A stretch of 64,000 bases of DNA, taken from positions 248,001 to 312,000 of IMG/VR virus record IMGVR_UViG_3300042010_000106. The stretch is one strand, 5' to 3'. Below the pieces are notes generated by a model, which searched no databases, was not told the DNA's origin, and saw nothing but the letters and a program-made list of their open reading frames with translations. The translations under genes were made by a program, and so were the position numbers. Shown here in pieces: positions 35,652 through 54,727 of this stretch. Positions within the stretch are counted from its first letter, which is position 1. Every line of letters starts with the position of its first letter.

Positions 35652-38600
35652 ATGTCTGAACTTTGGGCAAAAAATCGAATCGCGGATTCGATGGCTCGTT
35701 ATCGTGAATCGGAATTCATGGCAACAGCCGCAGACGACACAACCACCGAAACCAACTTCGTCCGCTCTATGCGTCCGGTCGCCCTCGACATGGATCGTGA
35801 TAAAGAATTCGAAGGTTTCTTCTTTCCAAAAGGCGAAGCAACTCCAGACGGTTACACGGCGCGTGAATTCTTGCTGCCTGTTCTGGAATCGCTGAGTGAT
35901 GTAACGTCGAACATCAACCTGTTCTACGCGTTCATGCGTCAATGTATGAACAACGCCAACCACATTTCTGGTATGAGTCAGGAAGACGCACAGACTTATA
36001 TCGACATGTATTTCCACGACACGTTCCGTATGAAACGTGCCGAAAGCTCTACCAAAACAATCGTACAAAACTTCCTGATCGCAATTCGCGCATCGTCTTC
36101 TTCGTTCCACAATATCTATCGTTCTGCTCGTTATGCAGACGGTGTTGATATCGTGATGAATGGCACCGGTGACGACGTACGCGGTCGCGATGTTCCGCCT
36201 GTGTTCTTCGGTTCCATGGACGCTGATTTGCACGGCCCATCGTTCCTGAATAACGGCGGTCGTCACGAATGGGCAGTTGATCGTGAACGTCGCGGCAAAT
36301 GGCAATCCACTTTCGGTCTGAATCTGGTAGCCGCTGCAAAAGATATCAGCGTTTTCCTGTTTGGCACTTCTGCAATCAGCGACCGTACGCTTCACAAATC
36401 GCTGAGTCTTTCGACAGAATTCACAAAGATTGAAGAAATCTTTACCCGTCACACCGGGTTCAAACTGCCGAAGGAAATGATTACCGACCTGAACATTACC
36501 AACCATTTGGCAGAGCAATTTCTGCAAGTGGAAATGCTCAAGGTTCCAAGCGGCATGGCGAAAAACGTTGCAGCACGTGTACGCGCCGGTAACATCCGCA
36601 AGCCGTCTGACTTCACTGGTGAAGTTGGCCGCTCCAGCATGCACGAAGCGAACACGCTTGTTGAACATCGTATGAACAGCGACGATGAATTCATTTCGCC
36701 TGAAGCTGAAGCGCTGAACGTTTGCCTGCGTTCTACAATTCGTTTCACACTGGAAAAAGACATCGCAAATTATGTCAGCCAGTCTGAAGAACACGAACGC
36801 CCAAGCCTGAGCCGTATCAACGCGTGGTTCTCCCTGTACATCGGCCAAGTATTGCGCGCACGTGCGACCGCAAAACGTAAAGGCCAACCGAAATCGCGTA
36901 ACGCTTCGACAATCAGCATGAACGACATTCCTCGCTATGCGATGGGTGCAACAACGCTGAAGAAATTGTCGGATATTCGTGCGTCCAATGGTTTCGTTGT
37001 AGAAAAAACCAAAGGCAACAGCGAAGACATGTATGTAACGCCAAGCGGCACGTTGTCTGTGCGCCCAAGCGTTGACGCATTCAAAGCTTCCACACAAGCA
37101 GAAGACTACGAAAAGTTGTCTGATGAAATTCTGGAAATTTTGAACCGTTACGACATTCCGATGGCTGCTTTCCAAAGCAATCCTCGCGCTGATGCGTGGC
37201 CGCACATTAACGCAGTTGATATCGAAAAGCTGTGGGAATTGCTGCAAGAATTGAAATCGTATGACGGCGCTCTGATCGGTTACGATTGGGACTACGGCGT
37301 ACAGATTTATGCTTCGTCCACTCCCGGCATTCTGACGACTTCGTTGGAAAACGGTGCTGTAACTCCTGACGCTTTGACCATTGCCGACCAGCTCGGTTAC
37401 AACATGGCGAAAGAAGGTCAGCAGCCGATGAAACGTAGCTTTGCGTCTACTATGTACACGCTGACTTACGCGCATCCGGTTGGACAAGTTAAACGCGAAT
37501 CGGAACGTATGTACGGTGCCGACGCAGATGCAGGCGCAGCAGCTTTTGCGAAGTCGAACATCGTAAAAGAAATTGTTAACCTGTACCTGAAACTCGCGTA
37601 CAACGATAACAAAGCGCCGAAAATGGATGTGCTTGCGAAGAATGCAATGCGCGCCCTCGGCCTTGAGAAATTGCCGACTGAAAAAGGTCACGATTACTCT
37701 TCGCTTTACCTGCGTTATTTCACCCCTGAAGGTGACATGAAACGCGAAACAACCACGTCTATTCGTGCGTTGCCTGTCGAACTGCTGGCCGATGCAATGA
37801 CGCAAGCAAGCGGCGGGCCGGGTTCGCAATTGTGGCATGACACCTACGAACAAATGGCAACCGGCGACAAATTGCCGAAGTCTTATGAGGTTGCGGAGGA
37901 ACTCGAAAACCATCCGAACTTCTTCAACACTTCGACATCGACTACTGCTGAATTCACCAAGCTGTATTCGTATTTCGGTGGTCAATTCTTCAAACAAATT
38001 CTCGATGCAATCAACAGTATTCCGGCCTCGGATTATCTGAACGAACGCAAATCGAAAGTAAGTGTTGAAGTCGGTGCAAACCCGTATCGTGATGATGGCA
38101 TTCCATTGGTTCTGGAACTGACTACACCGTCCAACACCACGATCATGAAAGACATTCTCCCGTACACTTTGATGCTCGGGAAATACGCAGTAAATCACGA
38201 AACGATTTTCGCTGAAGCTGACGAACAAGTAGAATCGTTGCAGCCGGATACTGGTTTCACCGCTGACGATTTGAAAATTCCGGGCATGGTTGCAGATGAT
38301 CGCGCCATTTTCCCGCACCAAGAAAGCGTGCAAGCTTCGTTGCGTAAACCAGTTCCTCCAGCCTTCGCAATTCTCGCACTTGATCCGGGTGGTGGTAAAA
38401 CCGGCCAAGGCGTAATCGACATGACCTGTATGGTTCGTGATATGTCGAGCGTTGGTAACGTGGTGCGTCCATTGGTGATTTGCCCTAACGGTCTGATTAC
38501 TCAATGGTGTGAAGACATCAAATATTTCCTCGGCGCAAACTGGAACGCGTTTCCACTGTCTGCCGATGTGATGAAACGTTGGGGTCAAGACAAGTTGCTG

Positions 38601-41600
38601 GCGTACGCTGCGAAAGCACCGGCCAACACAATCTTTATCGCTTCGATGACTTTCATTCAAGGCCGTAACGTAAAACTTACCATTGGTAACGCGCAAATCG
38701 ACGTTCCGATGAACCTTGAATTCGTGCGCCGCTTGGGTTGCAGCTATGTTGCAATCGACGAATCGCACAACCTGAAAAACTTCACGTCTTCCCGTCACAA
38801 AGCTGTGAAAGCTCTGACCACTGCAACCACCGTGAAATGGATTCGTCTGTTGACCGGTACAATCATGCCCGACCGCGCACGCGATATCGAAGGCCAGATT
38901 GCATTGCATAGCCCGGCTGTTTTCCGCAGTGGCGAAATCGCGATGATTAAATCCGATGCGGACGTGGGCGAAGAAGACGTAATTATCGACGGCAAAGCTG
39001 TTGCTACTTACACACCGCTCAACGCAAAACGCGCTGTAGATAAGCTGAGTCATTACGCTGCATTCATTGTGAAAAAGCGTAAGGAATGGGCGTTCATGTT
39101 GCCCGCTCCAATCGAACGTTTCCTCGCTATCGGCATGGTCGATACCGACGAAGGAAGCATGACCAGCGAACTTGAACGTGAACAGCAAAAACTTCACGCA
39201 CAACTCTATGAGACTGTGTTGAAGAAAACGCTGGAAGACGTGAAGAAACTGCAAGCGCAGAAAAACAAAGTCAGCGCAGGCGAAGACGAAGAGGAAGACA
39301 ACGGCGGTGGCGAAAGCAACCCGGATAACGACGTTGACTTTGCTGGTGAAAAGATTGACCAACTGACGTGGGAAACAAGTATTGCACGTCTGGAACGTTT
39401 GATCATTGCACCGCAATTCGACGAAGATTTCCAAAGCGTTTTCGGTGATGCTGGCGCGAATTTCAAATCGCGAAAAGCCAAGTACATTGCCAACCTCGTA
39501 GACGACCACTTCCATCCGGCAGCATGGCGCCGGGGCCAGTCTTACAAAGAATACAATTTGGTTGCCCATGGCGATAAACTTTATGTTGCTCGCAAATGGA
39601 ACGCTCAAGTTGCAGACCACGTTGCACTTCCACCAGAAGTTCAGAACATTGCACCACCGGATGCGCCTGAATACTGGAAAGAAGAACCACGCGGCAAGTG
39701 CATTGTTATTACACGGTACAACTACAGCGCCCGCGCAGTTTATGAAGCGCTGCCTGCTGAGTACCAACGTCAAGCGGTGATTTTCACCGGTGACGAACCG
39801 AATAAGCACGAAGGGTTTAACCGTTTCAAAACGGATAACAAAATCCAGATCCTTATCGCGAACGAACAAGGTATGTCCGAAGGTCACAACCTGCAACTTG
39901 CAAGCCGGATTATCCGTGCTGAAAGTCCGTGGGGGCCGGGTGCACTGAGCCAGACTAACGCCCGTATTTTCCGTCCTGATCCGAAAGGTGCAATGGCGGC
40001 TGCGAACGGTAGCGGCGAAATGACGCGTGACGTTGTTTTCCTTGATTGGGTATTGGCAAACAACACGATGGAAGTTCCTAAACTTGCGCGTGTTATTTCG
40101 AAGACGTTCGGTATCGTACGTTTCACCGAAGCCGACAACCCACGTTACAAAGGCGTGCTGTCGCAATACATCGTTCCAACCGAAAAGGAAAACCCTGAGC
40201 TTTCCCTCGGCGTGGAAATGTTGGCAAACATTAAAGGTCTGCAAGACTCGCCATTTAAAGAAATGGTTGGTTCTGATACCGAAGTCGGCGCTTATCAAGC
40301 GTTGAACAAAGTTGAAAACCAAGAATTCCGGGAAATGCGCCAGACCCAACGTGCTGTGATGCTTCCAATCCAAGCCGATGCAAACGTGCCCGGTGCAGAA
40401 CGTATGGAAGTGTTGCCTTTCGTGCCGAACCAACCAATTCCAGATCCGAAAGGTTGGGAGCCGGTTGTAGTTGCACACGTATTGCGTGATGAAAAGATCG
40501 CAAGTAATTACGACGAAGAATTGTTCGGTAAACCCGTGATGACAGAATTCGGCCTCGGTCGGATTGTTAACTTCACCACGAAAAAGGGTAGCGGCGGCAA
40601 AGTGCTTTCGAGCATCAAAGTCCGTATCAAAAACCCACCGGCTGACTTCGACGAATGGCAGACCATCGACGCGACACTGGTTCACCTTGTAACTGGTGAA
40701 ATCAAACGCGAAGATTTGCCGTTGTTTGACGTGCCACTTGATCGTACTCCTACGGATGCGAAAAGGTCTGACCGCCAAGCAGAACGTGAGCAGAAACAGC
40801 GCGAAGCACAGGAAGCCGAAGAAGAGAAAGAACGTCAAATTCGTGAACGTCAAGCAGCGAAGACAATCCGCATCGTTAAGAAACAAGATGCCGATGGTCA
40901 GAAACGCCGTGAGAACGAAGCGAAAGGCCGTCCACTCAACGAAGGCGTCTACACAATTGATCAAGGTACACCGCTGCCTACAGCAATCACCAAAGCCGTC
41001 ATTCCTGAAGGTGGTGATCCAACTGTCGGCGTAATCGTTGAAGGGGATAACACAGTAAATGTTTATCCTGCTTACTACCACGGCTTTGCAACACTGGAAG
41101 CTGAGTTCGACGAAACCGCAGTGAACCTGAAAAAACTTGGTTTCAAACACACGCCGCCGTACGCGTTCGTGGTTGTTTCCAACAAGAAGAAATTCCACGC
41201 CATCTACGAATACTTGCACAATAACTTCGATCTTCGCGACAAAACTGTTTCGATGATTGAGGAAATCAACAACGCATTCGAACCGGGCCGGAAAAACGTA
41301 CACAACCTGTGGTACAAACTTGAACTGGCGCCGGTAACGTCGCTGCCGGGTTTCTTCAACACGTCGAAACGTATTGTTGAAAACCGTCGTGAAGTCCGGG
41401 TGTTCCCGGTGTTCATGGAAGATCAAGTCATGCTCTGCATTGACCTGCGTACAAACCCTGCAATTTTGAAACATATCGGCAAAGCAATTCCGGGTGCTGG
41501 TACGAAATGGCAGAAGTCCGATGGTCATTGGTTCTACTTCGGCAAAGGCAAAACTGATTTGCGTGACATGATCGCGAAAATCAAACGCAACGGCTACGAT

Positions 41601-41666
41601 GTTGTGAACGCCAAAGAAGCGCTGAAAGAGCTGACCGAACTTCGGTTCAAATTCCGCAAAGACTGA
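35652..41666 (+). CDS. 2004-aa SNF2-family (SF2) ATPase with large unknown N- and C-terminal regions
   Basis: HQESV...LALDPGGGKT (I), VAIDESHNLKN (II), LLTGT (III), EGHNLQ (V), QTNARIFR (VI). Confidence 0.85.
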   Translation: MSELWAKNRIADSMARYRESEFMATAADDTTTETNFVRSMRPVALDMDRDKEFEGFFFPKGEATPDGYTAREFLLPVLESLSDVTSNINLFYAFMRQCMNNANHISGMSQEDAQTYIDMYFHDTFRMKRAESSTKTIVQNFLIAIRASSSSFHNIYRSARYADGVDIVMNGTGDDVRGRDVPPVFFGSMDADLHGPSFLNNGGRHEWAVDRERRGKWQSTFGLNLVAAAKDISVFLFGTSAISDRTLHKSLSLSTEFTKIEEIFTRHTGFKLPKEMITDLNITNHLAEQFLQVEMLKVPSGMAKNVAARVRAGNIRKPSDFTGEVGRSSMHEANTLVEHRMNSDDEFISPEAEALNVCLRSTIRFTLEKDIANYVSQSEEHERPSLSRINAWFSLYIGQVLRARATAKRKGQPKSRNASTISMNDIPRYAMGATTLKKLSDIRASNGFVVEKTKGNSEDMYVTPSGTLSVRPSVDAFKASTQAEDYEKLSDEILEILNRYDIPMAAFQSNPRADAWPHINAVDIEKLWELLQELKSYDGALIGYDWDYGVQIYASSTPGILTTSLENGAVTPDALTIADQLGYNMAKEGQQPMKRSFASTMYTLTYAHPVGQVKRESERMYGADADAGAAAFAKSNIVKEIVNLYLKLAYNDNKAPKMDVLAKNAMRALGLEKLPTEKGHDYSSLYLRYFTPEGDMKRETTTSIRALPVELLADAMTQASGGPGSQLWHDTYEQMATGDKLPKSYEVAEELENHPNFFNTSTSTTAEFTKLYSYFGGQFFKQILDAINSIPASDYLNERKSKVSVEVGANPYRDDGIPLVLELTTPSNTTIMKDILPYTLMLGKYAVNHETIFAEADEQVESLQPDTGFTADDLKIPGMVADDRAIFPHQESVQASLRKPVPPAFAILALDPGGGKTGQGVIDMTCMVRDMSSVGNVVRPLVICPNGLITQWCEDIKYFLGANWNAFPLSADVMKRWGQDKLLAYAAKAPANTIFIASMTFIQGRNVKLTIGNAQIDVPMNLEFVRRLGCSYVAIDESHNLKNFTSSRHKAVKALTTATTVKWIRLLTGTIMPDRARDIEGQIALHSPAVFRSGEIAMIKSDADVGEEDVIIDGKAVATYTPLNAKRAVDKLSHYAAFIVKKRKEWAFMLPAPIERFLAIGMVDTDEGSMTSELEREQQKLHAQLYETVLKKTLEDVKKLQAQKNKVSAGEDEEEDNGGGESNPDNDVDFAGEKIDQLTWETSIARLERLIIAPQFDEDFQSVFGDAGANFKSRKAKYIANLVDDHFHPAAWRRGQSYKEYNLVAHGDKLYVARKWNAQVADHVALPPEVQNIAPPDAPEYWKEEPRGKCIVITRYNYSARAVYEALPAEYQRQAVIFTGDEPNKHEGFNRFKTDNKIQILIANEQGMSEGHNLQLASRIIRAESPWGPGALSQTNARIFRPDPKGAMAAANGSGEMTRDVVFLDWVLANNTMEVPKLARVISKTFGIVRFTEADNPRYKGVLSQYIVPTEKENPELSLGVEMLANIKGLQDSPFKEMVGSDTEVGAYQALNKVENQEFREMRQTQRAVMLPIQADANVPGAERMEVLPFVPNQPIPDPKGWEPVVVAHVLRDEKIASNYDEELFGKPVMTEFGLGRIVNFTTKKGSGGKVLSSIKVRIKNPPADFDEWQTIDATLVHLVTGEIKREDLPLFDVPLDRTPTDAKRSDRQAEREQKQREAQEAEEEKERQIRERQAAKTIRIVKKQDADGQKRRENEAKGRPLNEGVYTIDQGTPLPTAITKAVIPEGGDPTVGVIVEGDNTVNVYPAYYHGFATLEAEFDETAVNLKKLGFKHTPPYAFVVVSNKKKFHAIYEYLHNNFDLRDKTVSMIEEINNAFEPGRKNVHNLWYKLELAPVTSLPGFFNTSKRIVENRREVRVFPVFMEDQVMLCIDLRTNPAILKHIGKAIPGAGTKWQKSDGHWFYFGKGKTDLRDMIAKIKRNGYDVVNAKEALKELTELRFKFRKD

Positions 41667-49408: not shown

Positions 49409-51076
49409 ATGGATAAAATAATCATATCGGATAAGCTGTATGTCCCAACACACGCCATCCCTGAGAAGCGTGTGCAGAAGCATTATTTCAAGTCTTTCTT
49501 TTCCGATTATGGTTGTCGCCAGTGCGATTTTCGTCCTGAGCGTCCAGTTAAAGAATGTACAGGTTGTGAGAACTTCGGCGGGCATTACAAGCTGGCGAAC
49601 ACCCGCATTATTGGCAACGTGGAATACTACGGTTTGCCTTTGGGTGATCGCGAAAATATCGAAGATAAAATGCGCATTGATTTCGACGATTACAAGATCG
49701 TTGATAAGCGGTGCCGCGAAGAGTTCGACTACAAAATCAAAGTGAGCCTCGGCGAAGGTCGCGACTGGTTCCCTTACCAGTTGAAAACCATTGATCGAAT
49801 GAAGAAAGCTAAGTACGGCCTGTTTGTTTTGCCGCCGCGTTCTGGTAAATCTTTGACAGCGATTAAACTGGCTGTAGAGCTGGGCTACAAAGTCCTGCTG
49901 ATCGCTGACCAATACGACTTCTTGAATCAGTTCATCGGTGACATTGAGGAAAGCACCAACCTCAAAGCGTTGCAGGAAAAGACTGGTAAAAAGTTGTACG
50001 GTTTCATCAAGTCCAAAAAGGATTTGAAAGATATCCAAATCGGGATCATCACGTATCAATCGTTGATTACCGACAGCGGGCGCAAGCTGTTGCGTGCCTG
50101 CAACAAAACGTTTGGCACCGTGCTATGCGACGAAGTGCAATCGACAGGCGCACCGGAATTTTCATGGGTTATGAACAACATGAAAATGCGTTACCGTTTC
50201 GGCTGTACCGGTACTGAAGAACGCAAAGACGGTAAACACATAATCACGTTCCTTGTGATTGGTGGTGTGAAATCAAAAATCAAACGTGCGCAGATGACGG
50301 CGAAGATGCTCGCCATCGACACGGGGTTAAAATCGAAAGGGAAATTCCAAGGCAAGGCCGGGTTTGTTCACCTCGGTAAAGCACTTGCGAAAAACGAGAA
50401 ACGAAATGCGTTGATTCTTGAGTGGGTTTTGAAGGATTTGGAAGCCGGTCACAGTATCGTTATTCCGCTGCACTTCAAAGATCATATCGAGGAAATGGTT
50501 CGCCGTATCAACGCAGCCGTGGGCTACGAAGTTGCAGCCGCATTTGTTGGTGGTGGTACATCGCCAAAGAAAAACAAAGAACGTCGCGACTGGATTAAAG
50601 CGCAAGCATCTGCACGGAAAATTCGTGTTGTTGTGGGCATTCGTAAACTGCTGCAACGCGGTATCAACATTAAACCGTGGAGCTGCCTGTACTACGTCAT
50701 GCCAATGAATAACGAACCGAACTGGAAACAGGAAAGCTCGCGTATTCTCACGCCAGACCCGGATAAACGACAGCCGATTATTCGGTTCTTTGTGGATAGT
50801 GGTGCGCAAGCGTCTTTGAAGTATTGTGCGAACACGTGGGAACAGGCGATTAAGTTCAACCACCAACCTACACCAACCGCACTCGACCGTATGCGCGTGA
50901 TGCTGAAAAATGTAAAGCGCAACATAAGCGAAGAAGCGGCAGACTGTGAAGTCGAAGTGAGTACAGCAGGCGTGCGGCCATCGGGCGGAATGTTCGGTAA
51001 TATCGCTGCGCAAATTGCCAGTAAGCGCCAAGACAACAAAGCGGACTATTGGAAAAAGAAGAAAGGTAAAAAATGA
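49409..51076 (+). CDS. SF2 DNA helicase (UvsW-like) with N-terminal CxxC...CxxC
   Basis: FPYQ (Q motif), LPPRSGKS (I), CDEVQ (II), GCTGT (III), QRGINI (V), QESSRILT (VI). Confidence 0.9.
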   Translation: MDKIIISDKLYVPTHAIPEKRVQKHYFKSFFSDYGCRQCDFRPERPVKECTGCENFGGHYKLANTRIIGNVEYYGLPLGDRENIEDKMRIDFDDYKIVDKRCREEFDYKIKVSLGEGRDWFPYQLKTIDRMKKAKYGLFVLPPRSGKSLTAIKLAVELGYKVLLIADQYDFLNQFIGDIEESTNLKALQEKTGKKLYGFIKSKKDLKDIQIGIITYQSLITDSGRKLLRACNKTFGTVLCDEVQSTGAPEFSWVMNNMKMRYRFGCTGTEERKDGKHIITFLVIGGVKSKIKRAQMTAKMLAIDTGLKSKGKFQGKAGFVHLGKALAKNEKRNALILEWVLKDLEAGHSIVIPLHFKDHIEEMVRRINAAVGYEVAAAFVGGGTSPKKNKERRDWIKAQASARKIRVVVGIRKLLQRGINIKPWSCLYYVMPMNNEPNWKQESSRILTPDPDKRQPIIRFFVDSGAQASLKYCANTWEQAIKFNHQPTPTALDRMRVMLKNVKRNISEEAADCEVEVSTAGVRPSGGMFGNIAAQIASKRQDNKADYWKKKKGKK

Positions 51077-51300
51077 GTGTAATCATCCTGCGTGCCCGTG
51101 CCGAACAAACAGCAGAACAGCGTAAAGAATGTGAAGTGTTTACACGGAACTACGAATCGCATACAGCGCACACGCAGGAAGAGGTTCACCGATACCTTGA
51201 ATGCAACCCGTTGAAAGATGTTACCTACGTTGCGTGGGTTTCGGTGGTTCTTTTTGGGTTGCTGTTTCTTATTTATTGGGTATGGAGAAATAAGAAATGA
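51073..51300 (+). CDS. Small membrane protein (C-terminal TM helix)
   Basis: VAWVSVVLFGLLFLIYWVW followed by RNKK. Confidence 0.7.
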   Translation: MSVIILRARAEQTAEQRKECEVFTRNYESHTAHTQEEVHRYLECNPLKDVTYVAWVSVVLFGLLFLIYWVWRNKK

Positions 51301-51488
51301 ATTTCGAAGCAGATACACCGGTTCACCTTGGCAACATTGCAGAAGCGGAAGCCGCATTTCAAGCGAAGCTCAAAGCAATGTTGAATCCCGATGTCGGCAC
51401 CATTGGTCACGTTGATCACGGTAAGCCAAAGACATATCAACCGAAATTGAACCGCGCACAACGTCGCGCACAGAAGCACAAAAAATGA
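51297..51488 (+). CDS. 63-aa protein containing the EF-Tu G1-region peptide VGTIGHVDHGK
   Basis: GGAG SD, ATGA-coupled at both ends; 11-residue identity to EF-Tu (N)VGTIGHVDHGK(T); C-terminal NRAQRRA. Confidence 0.8.
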   Translation: MNFEADTPVHLGNIAEAEAAFQAKLKAMLNPDVGTIGHVDHGKPKTYQPKLNRAQRRAQKHKK

Positions 51489-51670
51489 TTACAACTGGCG
51501 GCTGGATCGCAATTGGTATAGGCGCTGTGATTGTTGTCGTTGGAGCTATCGCAATTTTCCGCGAATGGCTCGACATGCAAGACGCGCAAAATGAACTGGA
51601 ACGCATGCAGTACAATAAATTCCAGTACGACAACCACACGGCTTTCGAACAATACAATAAAAAGGAATAA
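51485..51670 (+). CDS. Small membrane protein (N-terminal TM helix)
   Basis: GGWIAIGIGAVIVVVGAIAIF. Confidence 0.75.
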   Translation: MITTGGWIAIGIGAVIVVVGAIAIFREWLDMQDAQNELERMQYNKFQYDNHTAFEQYNKKE

Positions 51671-51674
51671 TCCT

Positions 51675-54705: not shown

Positions 54706-54727
54706 AGGGGCCTAGTGCCCCTTTTTT
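54706..54727 (+). terminator. Intrinsic terminator
   Basis: AGGGGC-CTAGT-GCCCCT-TTTTT. Confidence 0.85.

What the first reader, a model, noticed from the sequence alone, without database searches (positions are those of the whole stretch)
51297..51488. 63-aa phage protein carrying an exact 11-residue EF-Tu P-loop peptide (VGTIGHVDHGK)
Seen: 51393-51425 encodes VGTIGHVDHGK in a well-coupled small ORF. It is preceded by an amphipathic helix and followed by P (not T) and a basic NRAQRRAQKHKK tail, so it is not a GTPase. Established: (N)VGTIGHVDHGK(T) is the EF-Tu G1 region; IF2, SelB and EF-G differ just upstream of GHVDHGK. EF-Tu is a target of anti-phage and toxin systems (Lit cleavage, Doc phosphorylation). 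Inference: molecular mimicry, as a decoy for an EF-Tu-binding defence factor, a competitor for an EF-Tu partner such as EF-Ts, or a phosphate/guanine-nucleotide-binding loop; a captured tuf fragment is the neutral alternative.
Basis: partly seen in the sequence, partly recalled or inferred. Interest (0 to 1): 0.75.

Follow-up and report, generated by a model that had tools for sequence, protein, structure and literature searches.

The report
Phage mini-protein carrying an EF-Tu peptide
A real, strongly conserved 63-residue protein of a soil jumbo phage displays an 11-residue copy of the bacterial elongation factor Tu P-loop region, and it is one of many unrelated-looking phage proteins that keep this same host peptide, which points to an undescribed use of it whose target is still unknown.

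Summary
Window 51297-51488 (+) is a 63-aa ORF with VGTIGHVDHGK at 51393-51425, and every solved-structure match is EF-Tu. The gene is real: it has a Shine-Dalgarno site, ATGA overlaps on both sides, four syntenic orthologues, and dN/dS of about 0.05.

It is not a GTPase. G2-G5 are absent, Pro replaces the Mg-binding Thr, and orthologues change the first Walker glycine. The family consensus is V-G-T-[ILP]-[GC]-H-[VI]-D-[HY]-G-K. AlphaFold puts the motif in a flexible linker between an acidic helix and an Arg/Lys-rich helix.

The new result is that the peptide recurs.
- An IMG/VR scan for VGTIGHVDH gave 53 loci, 26 of them short ORFs unrelated to EF-Tu, in about 14 families.
- Controls found no such orphans: the EF-Tu G3 motif gave 0 of 65 and the EF-G G1 motif 0 of 21.
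- Cultured phages of Vibrio, Pseudomonas, Burkholderia, Erwinia, Salmonella and Aggregatibacter carry similar ORFs, often with basic tails.
- In the SPN3US/Stratton family, H-x-N-V-G-T-I-G stays invariant despite synonymous codon changes, while the P-loop part decays.

Best reading: a tuf 5' fragment reused as a peptide mimic of the EF-Tu N-terminal segment. The partner is unidentified.

The parts
51297..51488 (+). 63-aa ORF (stop included): the EF-Tu-peptide mini-protein
   Evidence: Orthologues are L004 9319-9513, L238 6001-6240, L247 221-412 and P0001. dN/dS is about 0.05. The X2 and X3 relatives show 20 synonymous changes and 1 conservative change.
51284..51287 (+). GGAG Shine-Dalgarno, 9 nt before the ATG
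   Evidence: Read directly from the sequence.
51336..51383 (+). Residues 14-29: predicted acidic/amphipathic helix. It lies within the conserved N-terminal block FEADTP.H.GN..EAEAAFQ.
   Evidence: AlphaFold2 helix 14-29. Invariant columns in the orthologue alignment A4.
51393..51425 (+). EF-Tu G1/beta1 peptide VGTIGHVDHGK (EF-Tu residues 14-24). Family consensus: V-G-T-[ILP]-[GC]-H-[VI]-D-[HY]-G-K.
   Evidence: Orthologue variants. Predicted coil with low pLDDT. 26 of 33 nt match E. coli tufA, and all differences are at third codon positions.
51426..51428 (+). Pro44 in place of the Mg-coordinating Thr25 of EF-Tu. Vibrio phage henriette and 2.058.O also have GKP here.
51450..51485 (+). Arg/Lys-rich C-terminal helix NRAQRRAQKHKK, the most conserved block of the protein
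   Evidence: 11 of 12 residues are identical in L238 although synonymous sites are saturated. AlphaFold2 helix 53-62, pLDDT about 88.
51073..51300 (+). Upstream 75-aa ORF with a C-terminal hydrophobic segment; its stop overlaps the ATG of the 63-aa ORF
   Evidence: Conserved in L004 and L238.
51485..51670 (+). Downstream 61-aa ORF with an N-terminal hydrophobic segment; its start overlaps the stop of the 63-aa ORF. It is dispensable.
   Evidence: Absent from the X3 relative, where 51487-51671 is replaced by 8 nt, and from L238.
49409..51076 (+). ResIII-type helicase that opens the co-directional module. It is the anchor for synteny.
   Evidence: Pfam PF04851. 74% identical to the helicase of Pseudomonas phage HRDY3 and 37% to that of Erwinia phage Y3.

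Best explanation
The ORF encodes a genuine small phage protein. An 11-residue piece of the EF-Tu G1 region, taken at some point from the 5' end of a tuf gene, sits in a flexible linker. The linker joins a conserved acidic N-terminal helix to a conserved Arg/Lys-rich C-terminal helix. The protein is neither a GTPase nor a nucleotide binder.

It is one case of a wider, undescribed habit of phages: keeping the EF-Tu N-terminal beta1/G1 peptide, under purifying selection, inside otherwise unrelated small proteins that often end in a basic tail.

Most likely mechanism (inferred, not shown): the peptide acts as a linear mimic. It competes with, or stands in for, the EF-Tu N-terminal segment at a partner that reads that segment. 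The basic helix would supply affinity for RNA (ribosome or tRNA) or for an acidic protein surface.

Candidate partners, in my order of preference: (1) the 23S rRNA sarcin-ricin-loop pocket that receives EF-Tu Asp21; (2) an enzyme or toxin aimed at the EF-Tu P-loop, of the TreTu kind; (3) the rest of a nascent EF-Tu G domain.

Shown: coding status, selection, architecture, loss of the GTPase features, recurrence, and specificity of the recurrence. Inferred: mimicry as the purpose, and every candidate partner.
For: Real gene. It has a Shine-Dalgarno site and ATGA coupling. Syntenic orthologues occur in three other contigs. dN/dS is 0.055 against L247 and 0.046 against L004. Against L238 the motif and tail keep 8/11 and 11/12 residues although essentially every synonymous site has changed. 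Metagenomic relatives X2 and X3 show 20 synonymous changes and one V39I change inside the ORF.

The motif is more conserved than its linker flanks, which are rewritten and lengthened in L238.

Architecture: helix 14-29, coil 30-52, helix 53-62.

Specificity for EF-Tu: all 59 solved-structure matches are EF-Tu.

Recurrence. Of 53 IMG/VR loci with VGTIGHVDH, 26 are short ORFs unrelated to EF-Tu. No such orphans were found among 65 loci with the EF-Tu G3 motif or 21 loci with the EF-G G1 motif. Cultured phages carry the peptide too.

Independent selection evidence comes from a family found through its non-motif part. H.NVGTIG.V is invariant in 8 Erskinevirus, Machinavirus and Seoulvirus proteins that share 40-50% identity with Stratton gp214, and their codons vary synonymously.

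The same positions are tolerant in the window family and in the henriette/2.058.O pair: positions 36, 37 and 41 vary, while VGT, HVD and GKP are kept.

The close relative HRDY3 (helicase 74% identical) has, in the same module, a different ORF that shares only the motif.

From the literature: the EF-Tu Asp21 side chain is exposed, it is the target of an ADP-ribosylating Rhs toxin, and on the ribosome it enters a 23S rRNA pocket (PMC9825190).
Against: No partner is known. The only complex prediction (E. coli EF-Tu plus EF-Ts) gave no verdict.

The window family and the SPN3US-type family conserve different halves of the peptide: HVD.GK in one and H.NVGTIG in the other. A single common target is therefore not assured.

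In folded EF-Tu the VGT part is buried, so a partner of native EF-Tu would not read it. TreTu acts only on folded GTP-bound EF-Tu (PMC9825190).

Homology between the window family and the other families is detectable only across the motif itself (hhalign, 15 columns). The tail similarity is compositional.

The pattern scan fixes the motif by construction. Conservation could therefore be judged only in the families that were also found by other means.
Confidence: 0.4

Rival explanations
1. Exapted relic without mimicry. A tuf 5' fragment was captured and became part of the protein's own structure or of a phage-specific interaction surface. Its likeness to EF-Tu is history, not function.
For: The origin in tuf is clear. 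Vibrio phage Va2 still aligns to EF-Tu residues 10-65 at 46% identity. Families keep different parts of the peptide. Orthologues drift away from exact EF-Tu identity (I36P/L, G37C, H41Y). In the SPN3US-type proteins the segment could be an inherited strand-helix unit.
Against: This does not explain why only this EF-Tu segment, and not G3 or the EF-G G1, is found as an orphan. It also does not explain why about 14 otherwise unrelated contexts keep it, or why HRDY3 and the window phage share nothing but the motif in the same module. In the window protein the motif is predicted to be unstructured. The gp214-family model was too poor to show any fold (pLDDT 44).
Confidence: 0.27
2. Strand complementation. 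The peptide inserts as beta1/P-loop into a nascent or destabilised EF-Tu G domain, or co-aggregates with it, and so alters the pool of active EF-Tu.
For: The conserved core across most families is NVGTIGHV. This is the buried central strand of the G domain and is accessible only before folding. Tryptic N-terminal EF-Tu fragments appear as separate 37- and 45-residue chains in solved structures (2hcj, 5i4r).
Against: Window-family orthologues put Pro at position 36 and Cys at 37, which should break the strand. A phage needs EF-Tu for its own translation. There is no evidence of toxicity.
Confidence: 0.1
3. Miniature phosphate-binding loop that binds GTP, ppGpp, polyphosphate or nucleic acid, in the manner of engineered beta-(P-loop)-alpha prototypes.
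For: GHVDHGK is a Walker A loop. H38, D40, G42 and K43 are invariant in the window family. A basic helix follows it.
Against: Thr25 is replaced by Pro. The first Walker glycine is Cys in L238 and Lys in phage 2.058.O. In other families the GK is lost altogether, as in GRVAFDD, HVDHSR and HVDHPF. No strand or helix frames the loop in the model.
Confidence: 0.07
4. Substrate decoy for the known EF-Tu-directed systems Lit or Doc, or a competitor for EF-Ts.
For: EF-Tu is a recurrent target of abortive-infection and toxin systems. Type IV Thoeris caspase also cuts it, at R45 and R59 (bioRxiv 10.1101/2024.10.24.620036). The larger Vibrio-phage relatives Va2 and 150E35-1 keep the switch-I ERGIT segment, so the idea is open for them.
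Against: The 63-aa protein has no equivalent of G59/I60, R45/R59 or T382. EF-Tu is very abundant, so a stoichiometric decoy is implausible (own knowledge). PADLOC has no EF-Tu-like model to point to a partner.
Confidence: 0.05
5. Not a functional protein: a chance ORF over captured host DNA, or a DNA-level element such as an attachment-site remnant for integration into tuf.
For: The 26-nt codon string occurs exactly in the tuf genes of more than 120 bacterial species. Soil tuf contigs match the 33 nt with 1-5 differences.
Against: Substitutions are overwhelmingly synonymous across orthologues. The flanks are unrelated to tuf. The gene sits inside a co-directional coupled operon of a roughly 312-kb phage. 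The motif DNA itself differs between orthologues at third positions.
Confidence: 0.02

Closest known systems
EF-Tu G domain, G1 motif / beta1 strand (Pfam PF00009 GTP_EFTU)
   Same: Residues 33-43 are identical to EF-Tu residues 14-24, and only EF-Tu chains match in the PDB.
   Different: It has no G2-G5 motifs and no domains 2 and 3. Pro replaces Thr25. The protein is 63 aa, the motif lies in a coil, and the Pfam score is below the gathering cut-off.
PHROG families phrog_27465, phrog_12626 and phrog_28329 (unknown function), e.g. Stratton gp214 and SPN3US gp192
   Same: These are small phage proteins that hold the EF-Tu N-terminal peptide. The window ORF touches them weakly, and only through the motif (E 5e-4 and 0.04).
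   Different: No similarity outside the motif. That family conserves H.NVGTIG and lets the P-loop part decay, whereas the window family conserves HVD.GK.
Vibrio-phage EF-Tu N-terminal proteins (Va2 'elongation factor Tu' 195 aa, 150E35-1 P0089, 1.244.A gp125, henriette VPDG_00052)
   Same: They combine an EF-Tu-derived peptide with a basic C-terminal tail. Henriette and 2.058.O share GKP and the same tolerant positions as the window family.
   Different: They start with the EF-Tu N-terminus itself. Some keep helix A and switch I. Their tail motif is NP[FY]xxKHxxRQxNRR. hhalign links them to the window family only across 15 motif columns.
TreTu, a Salmonella Rhs ADP-ribosyltransferase acting on EF-Tu Asp21 (PMC9825190)
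   Same: It shows that the exposed face of this very loop is read by an antibacterial enzyme and by the 23S rRNA. The equivalent Asp40 is invariant in the window family.
   Different: TreTu needs folded, GTP-bound EF-Tu. No link to phage defence is known, and nothing ties the window protein to it.
Arginine-rich RNA-binding peptides such as the N-terminal motif of lambda N (own knowledge)
   Same: A short Arg/Lys/Gln-rich helix (NRAQRRAQKHKK) that is strongly conserved.
   Different: The likeness lies in composition only. No RNA target is known or tested.
Phage mimic and decoy proteins in general (e.g. the DNA mimic Ocr; own knowledge)
   Same: A small early-type phage protein that imitates a host molecule.
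   Different: Here the imitation is a short linear copy of a host protein segment, not a fold or charge mimic. The target is unknown.

Membership tests
Translational GTPase / EF-Tu (PF00009) | Complete Walker A G1 motif GxxxxGK[ST], conserved among relatives | tested here: not met
   Pro44 replaces the Ser/Thr. The first Gly is Cys in L238. Position 36 is I, L or P.
Translational GTPase / EF-Tu (PF00009) | G2 (RGITI), G3 (DxPGH), G4 (NKxD) and G5 motifs, and a G-domain fold | tested here: not met
   The protein is 63 aa. tblastn with EF-Tu finds only the 12-residue stretch in the whole window. AlphaFold2 gives two helices and coil.
Translational GTPase / EF-Tu (PF00009) | Pfam score above the gathering threshold | tested here: not met
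   13.8 bits against a cut-off of 26.5, E 0.043.
Phage 'EF-Tu N-terminal peptide' ORFs (a set proposed here; includes phrog_12626 and phrog_27465) | Short ORF, not EF-Tu, in a phage genome, with the EF-Tu residue 12-24 peptide in unrelated flanks | tested here: met
Phage 'EF-Tu N-terminal peptide' ORFs (a set proposed here) | Peptide kept by purifying selection in relatives found independently of it | tested here: met
   In the window family, 8-11 of 11 residues are kept although synonymous sites are saturated. In the gp214 family, H.NVGTIG.V is invariant.
Phage 'EF-Tu N-terminal peptide' ORFs (a set proposed here) | Common descent of the families beyond the motif | tested here: inconclusive
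   hhalign aligns only 15 motif columns. The shared 'PNVGT' form (HV missing) in L004, PaBG, L023/L052 and L032/L049 hints at a common phage lineage. Tail likeness is compositional.
Arginine-rich-motif RNA-binding peptides | Arg-rich helix that binds a defined RNA element | not testable with these tools
   The helix and its composition are seen. RNA binding cannot be assessed here.
Anti-defence decoy of Lit, Doc or type IV Thoeris | Contains the segment of EF-Tu that the defence enzyme cuts or modifies | tested here: not met
   No equivalent of G59/I60, R45/R59 or T382 in the 63 aa (cleavage sites and own knowledge).
Attachment-site or specialised-transduction remnant of tuf | DNA-level identity extending into tuf flanks, within an integration module | tested here: not met
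   The flanks are unrelated to tuf. The motif codons differ among orthologues. The gene lies within a helicase-to-sheath operon of a jumbo phage.

The most novel reading that the evidence does not exclude
Phages of many lineages share a portable recognition module: the N-terminal beta1/G1 peptide of EF-Tu, usually joined to a basic tail. With it they engage one conserved host component that normally meets this segment. That component could be the ribosomal GTPase-associated centre, a factor acting on nascent EF-Tu, or a toxin or sensor directed at EF-Tu. This would be a previously unrecognised way for phages to control or protect translation, and the 63-aa protein would be its minimal form.
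Probability: 0.3. Interest if true: 0.85.

Novelty: new variant of a known kind. Interest (0 to 1): 0.68.

Why it matters
EF-Tu is the most abundant bacterial protein and a recurrent target in phage-host and interbacterial conflict.

A short host-derived peptide that dozens of unrelated phage proteins keep under selection would be a natural probe for whatever reads the N-terminal segment of EF-Tu. The controls show that other conserved translation-factor motifs are not kept in this way.

The window protein is the smallest such case: two helices and a linker. A cultured relative exists, Pseudomonas phage HRDY3. The question can therefore be tested directly by pull-down, ribosome binding, mutation of eight residues, and gene deletion.

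Several database records call these ORFs 'elongation factor Tu' or 'GTPase'. The evidence here shows they are not, so those annotations should be corrected.

Tried and rejected
- Complex prediction of the 63-aa protein with E. coli EF-Tu and EF-Ts gave no verdict (score 0.00). It is not evidence either way.
- AlphaFold2 of the Stratton gp214 family had a mean pLDDT of 44 and was unusable. No fold search was made.
- The ESM Atlas feature search gave no hit above chance level.
- PADLOC had no match for EF-Tu, the window ORF or the Vibrio-phage relatives.
- The exhaustive profile search of 1.84 billion proteins found only P0001, P0006 and noise or EF-Tu fragments. The window family is small.
- Donor search by codon string: the 26-nt string is exact in the tuf genes of more than 120 species from many phyla, so it says nothing about the donor.
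- There is no homologue at the syntenic place in Erwinia phage Y3 or Dickeya phage JA11.
- No shared neighbour gene was found across the motif families.
- Literature searches for a phage EF-Tu mimic, decoy or truncated EF-Tu, and for the peptide string itself, found nothing relevant.
- A likeness of KTYQPKLNR to the N-terminus of ribosomal protein bL34 was considered, from memory only. I dropped it as too short to test.

Full report
**1. The observation.** Window 51297-51488 (+) is an ATG-started ORF of 63 codons. Codons 33-43 (51393-51425) read VGTIGHVDHGK. Pro follows, and the protein ends in NRAQRRAQKHKK.
- A GGAG lies 9 nt before the ATG.
- The ATG overlaps the TGA of the upstream 75-aa ORF, and the ORF's own TGA overlaps the ATG of the downstream 61-aa ORF.
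- tblastn with E. coli EF-Tu finds this as the only EF-Tu-like stretch in the window.
- All 59 matches among solved structures are EF-Tu chains.
- Pfam GTP_EFTU touches only residues 32-48 and scores below its threshold.

**2. It is a real gene under strong constraint.** Syntenic orthologues lie in three other contigs: L004, L238 and L247. A 98% identical protein (P0001) comes from a 312-kb contig, and IMG/VR holds the same ORF in a 312-kb and a 31.6-kb contig.

| Comparison | Result |
|---|---|
| Window vs L247 | dN/dS 0.055 |
| Window vs L004 | dN/dS 0.046 |
| Window vs L238, motif | 8/11 residues kept; synonymous sites saturated |
| Window vs L238, tail | 11/12 residues kept; synonymous sites saturated |
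| X2 and X3 contigs (rhizosphere) | 20 synonymous changes, one V39I |

In L238 the linker on both sides of the motif is rewritten and lengthened.

There is no sigma-70-like promoter on the + strand nearby. The gene lies inside a long co-directional block that runs from a ResIII helicase to a terminator-like hairpin at 54706, before the tail sheath gene.

**3. What phage this is.** The helicase is 74% identical to that of Pseudomonas phage HRDY3 (313.7 kb, pond water) and 37% identical to that of Erwinia phage Y3. Runs that hold the sequence are rhizosphere and soil metagenomes. The window therefore comes from a jumbo phage of about 312 kb. Its host is probably a soil Pseudomonas or similar; that is an inference.

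**4. It is not a GTPase and probably not a phosphate loop.**
- G2-G5 are absent.
- Pro replaces the Mg-binding Thr.
- The orthologue motifs are VGTIGHIDHGK, VGTLGHIDHGK, VGTPGHVDHGK and VGTPCHVDYGK. The first Walker glycine and the strand-ending Ile are therefore free to change.
- AlphaFold2 (shallow alignment, mean pLDDT 69) gives helix 14-29, coil 30-52 and helix 53-62.

The motif is thus displayed in a flexible linker between a conserved acidic helix and a conserved basic helix.

**5. Origin.** The peptide certainly derives from tuf, but not by recent capture from an E. coli-like gene. Seven of 11 codons differ from tufA at third positions, and the orthologues differ from one another in the same way. 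The codon string is exact in the tuf genes of more than 120 diverse species, so the donor cannot be named.

**6. The peptide recurs in phages, and the recurrence is specific.**

| Scan of 2.9 million viral contigs | Loci | Full-length | Orphans (short ORFs, flanks unrelated to the factor) |
|---|---|---|---|
| EF-Tu G1, VGTIGHVDH | 53 | 18 | 26, in about 14 families; the other 9 are truncated tuf or tuf cut by a contig end |
| EF-Tu G3, DCPGHADY (control) | 65 | 48 | 0 (13 cut by contig ends, 4 plainly truncated tuf) |
| EF-G G1, AHIDAGKTT (control) | 21 | 16 | 0 (4 cut by contig ends, 1 truncated fusA) |

Cultured phages show the same thing:
- Vibrio phages henriette and 2.058.O (59 aa), 1.244.A (133 aa), 207E48.1 (126 aa), 150E35-1 (239 aa) and Va2 (195 aa);
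- Burkholderia jumbo phage FLC9 gp386;
- Pseudomonas phage PaBG gp294;
- Aggregatibacter phages Aaphi23 and S1249;
- about 50 Erskinevirus, Machinavirus and Seoulvirus records, including SPN3US gp192.

Va2 still aligns to EF-Tu residues 10-65 (46% identity, E 6e-11). It is homologous along its whole length to the 150E35-1 protein. Many of these proteins end in a basic tail, and the Vibrio ones share NP[FY]xxKHxxRQxNRR. PHROGs lists the relevant families as of unknown function. Some GenBank records call them 'elongation factor Tu' or 'GTPase'.

**7. Selection on the peptide where the family was found by other means.** The Stratton gp214 family was collected through its non-motif part.
- H36, N38, V39, G40, T41, I42, G43 and V45 are invariant in eight proteins that share 40-50% identity with Stratton gp214.
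- The following residues decay, reading GRVAFDD, GRVTFSG or GHVGFSG.
- The invariant residues use varied codons.

This is selection on the EF-Tu beta1 strand sequence, not on phosphate binding.

The window family behaves differently: it keeps VGT, HVD and GK and lets positions 36, 37 and 41 vary. The henriette/2.058.O pair shows exactly that pattern, with VGTIGHVDYGKP against VGTTKHVDCGKP.

HRDY3 is a close relative of the window phage. In the same helicase-to-sheath module it has an unannotated ORF with KPHINVGTVGHIDWG that shares nothing else with the 63-aa protein.

Four jumbo-phage families (L004, PaBG, L023/L052, L032/L049) share the form PNVGT, which lacks the HV of EF-Tu. This hints at descent within phages. 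hhalign links the window and Vibrio families only across the motif.

**8. Mechanism.**

*Shown:* a constrained small protein; a host-derived peptide in a flexible linker; loss of the GTPase features; recurrence specific to this segment.

*Inferred:* the peptide works as a linear mimic of the EF-Tu N-terminal segment, and the basic helix gives affinity for RNA or an acidic surface.

The published work on TreTu shows that the Asp21 side chain of this loop is exposed. It also shows that an Rhs toxin ADP-ribosylates it, and that on the ribosome it enters a 23S rRNA pocket formed by G2655, C2658 and G2659 (PMC9825190). These are leads for partners.

Points against a simple decoy of native EF-Tu:
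- The VGT part is buried in the folded protein.
- TreTu needs the folded GTP form.
- EF-Tu is extremely abundant.

Lit, Doc and the type IV Thoeris caspase act at sites this protein does not contain (and own knowledge).

Strand complementation of a nascent G domain fits the families that conserve NVGTIG. It fits the window family poorly, because Pro occurs at position 36. The rival view, that the peptide is only a relic built into new proteins, cannot be excluded. It does not explain the specificity of the recurrence.

**9. Novelty and verdict.** I found no paper that describes phage proteins built on the EF-Tu N-terminal peptide. Host mimicry by small phage proteins is a known kind of strategy, and this would be a new variant of it.

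Interest is fairly high, because the pattern is broad, clean against controls, and directly testable. The mechanism remains open.

Noticed in passing
L239:2884-3342 (Pseudomonas phage HRDY3, PQ015379, record about 210164-210622): An unannotated ORF of up to 152 aa carries KPHINVGTVGHIDWG. It overlaps the ends of two annotated genes, in the module syntenic with the window's. It shares only the motif with the 63-aa protein.
   Followed up: partly
L239:1904-2137 (HRDY3, 77-aa ORF just after the helicase): It has an acidic helical N-terminus and a tail RPRLKANRKQRRMMKARG that resembles the window protein's tail (E 0.03 in a single comparison), but it has no EF-Tu motif.
   Followed up: partly
L001:859-1350 and L229:1942-2430 (Stratton gp213, SPN3US gp191): A GNAT acetyltransferase gene lies directly upstream of the EF-Tu-peptide gene in both Erskinevirus and Seoulvirus. 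In the other five fetched records of this family, an upstream gene also ends about 70 nt before the motif gene. This could be a functional pair.
   Followed up: partly
L018:1165-1693, L030:3050-3634, L060:3289-3873, L243:1501-1680 (Aaphi23 ORF27): In lambdoid-type phages a roughly 70-aa ORF that begins with EF-Tu residues 1-25 sits directly upstream of a Cys/His-rich ORF that looks like YbcO. In L030 and L060 the two are fused. In Aaphi23 the ORF lies in the nin region between ninB and ninG.
   Followed up: partly
L007/L033 (IMGVR_UViG_3300050131_000227), ORF 683-2419: An HNH-like N-terminal region runs in frame into a full-length EF-Tu gene on a 6.3-kb viral contig.
   Followed up: no
L017, L019, L028, L039, L042, L048, L053, L065 (viral contigs of 330-620 kb): Full-length EF-Tu genes occur on very large viral contigs, and EF-G genes occur on others (L256, L258, L264). 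These are either huge phages that encode translation factors or host contamination.
   Followed up: no
window 51487-51671: The downstream 61-aa membrane-type ORF is replaced by 8 nt in the X3 relative and is absent from L238. L004 and L238 carry two extra genes between the 75-aa ORF and the motif gene. The small-gene module is fluid.
   Followed up: partly
window 51452-51473: The tail-coding DNA holds a near-direct repeat (CGCGCACAA / CGCGCACAG, encoding RAQ twice). The terminator scan flags it as a hairpin on the minus strand.
   Followed up: no
window 35652-41666: A 2004-aa ORF lies on the + strand of the same window. I did not examine it.
   Followed up: no
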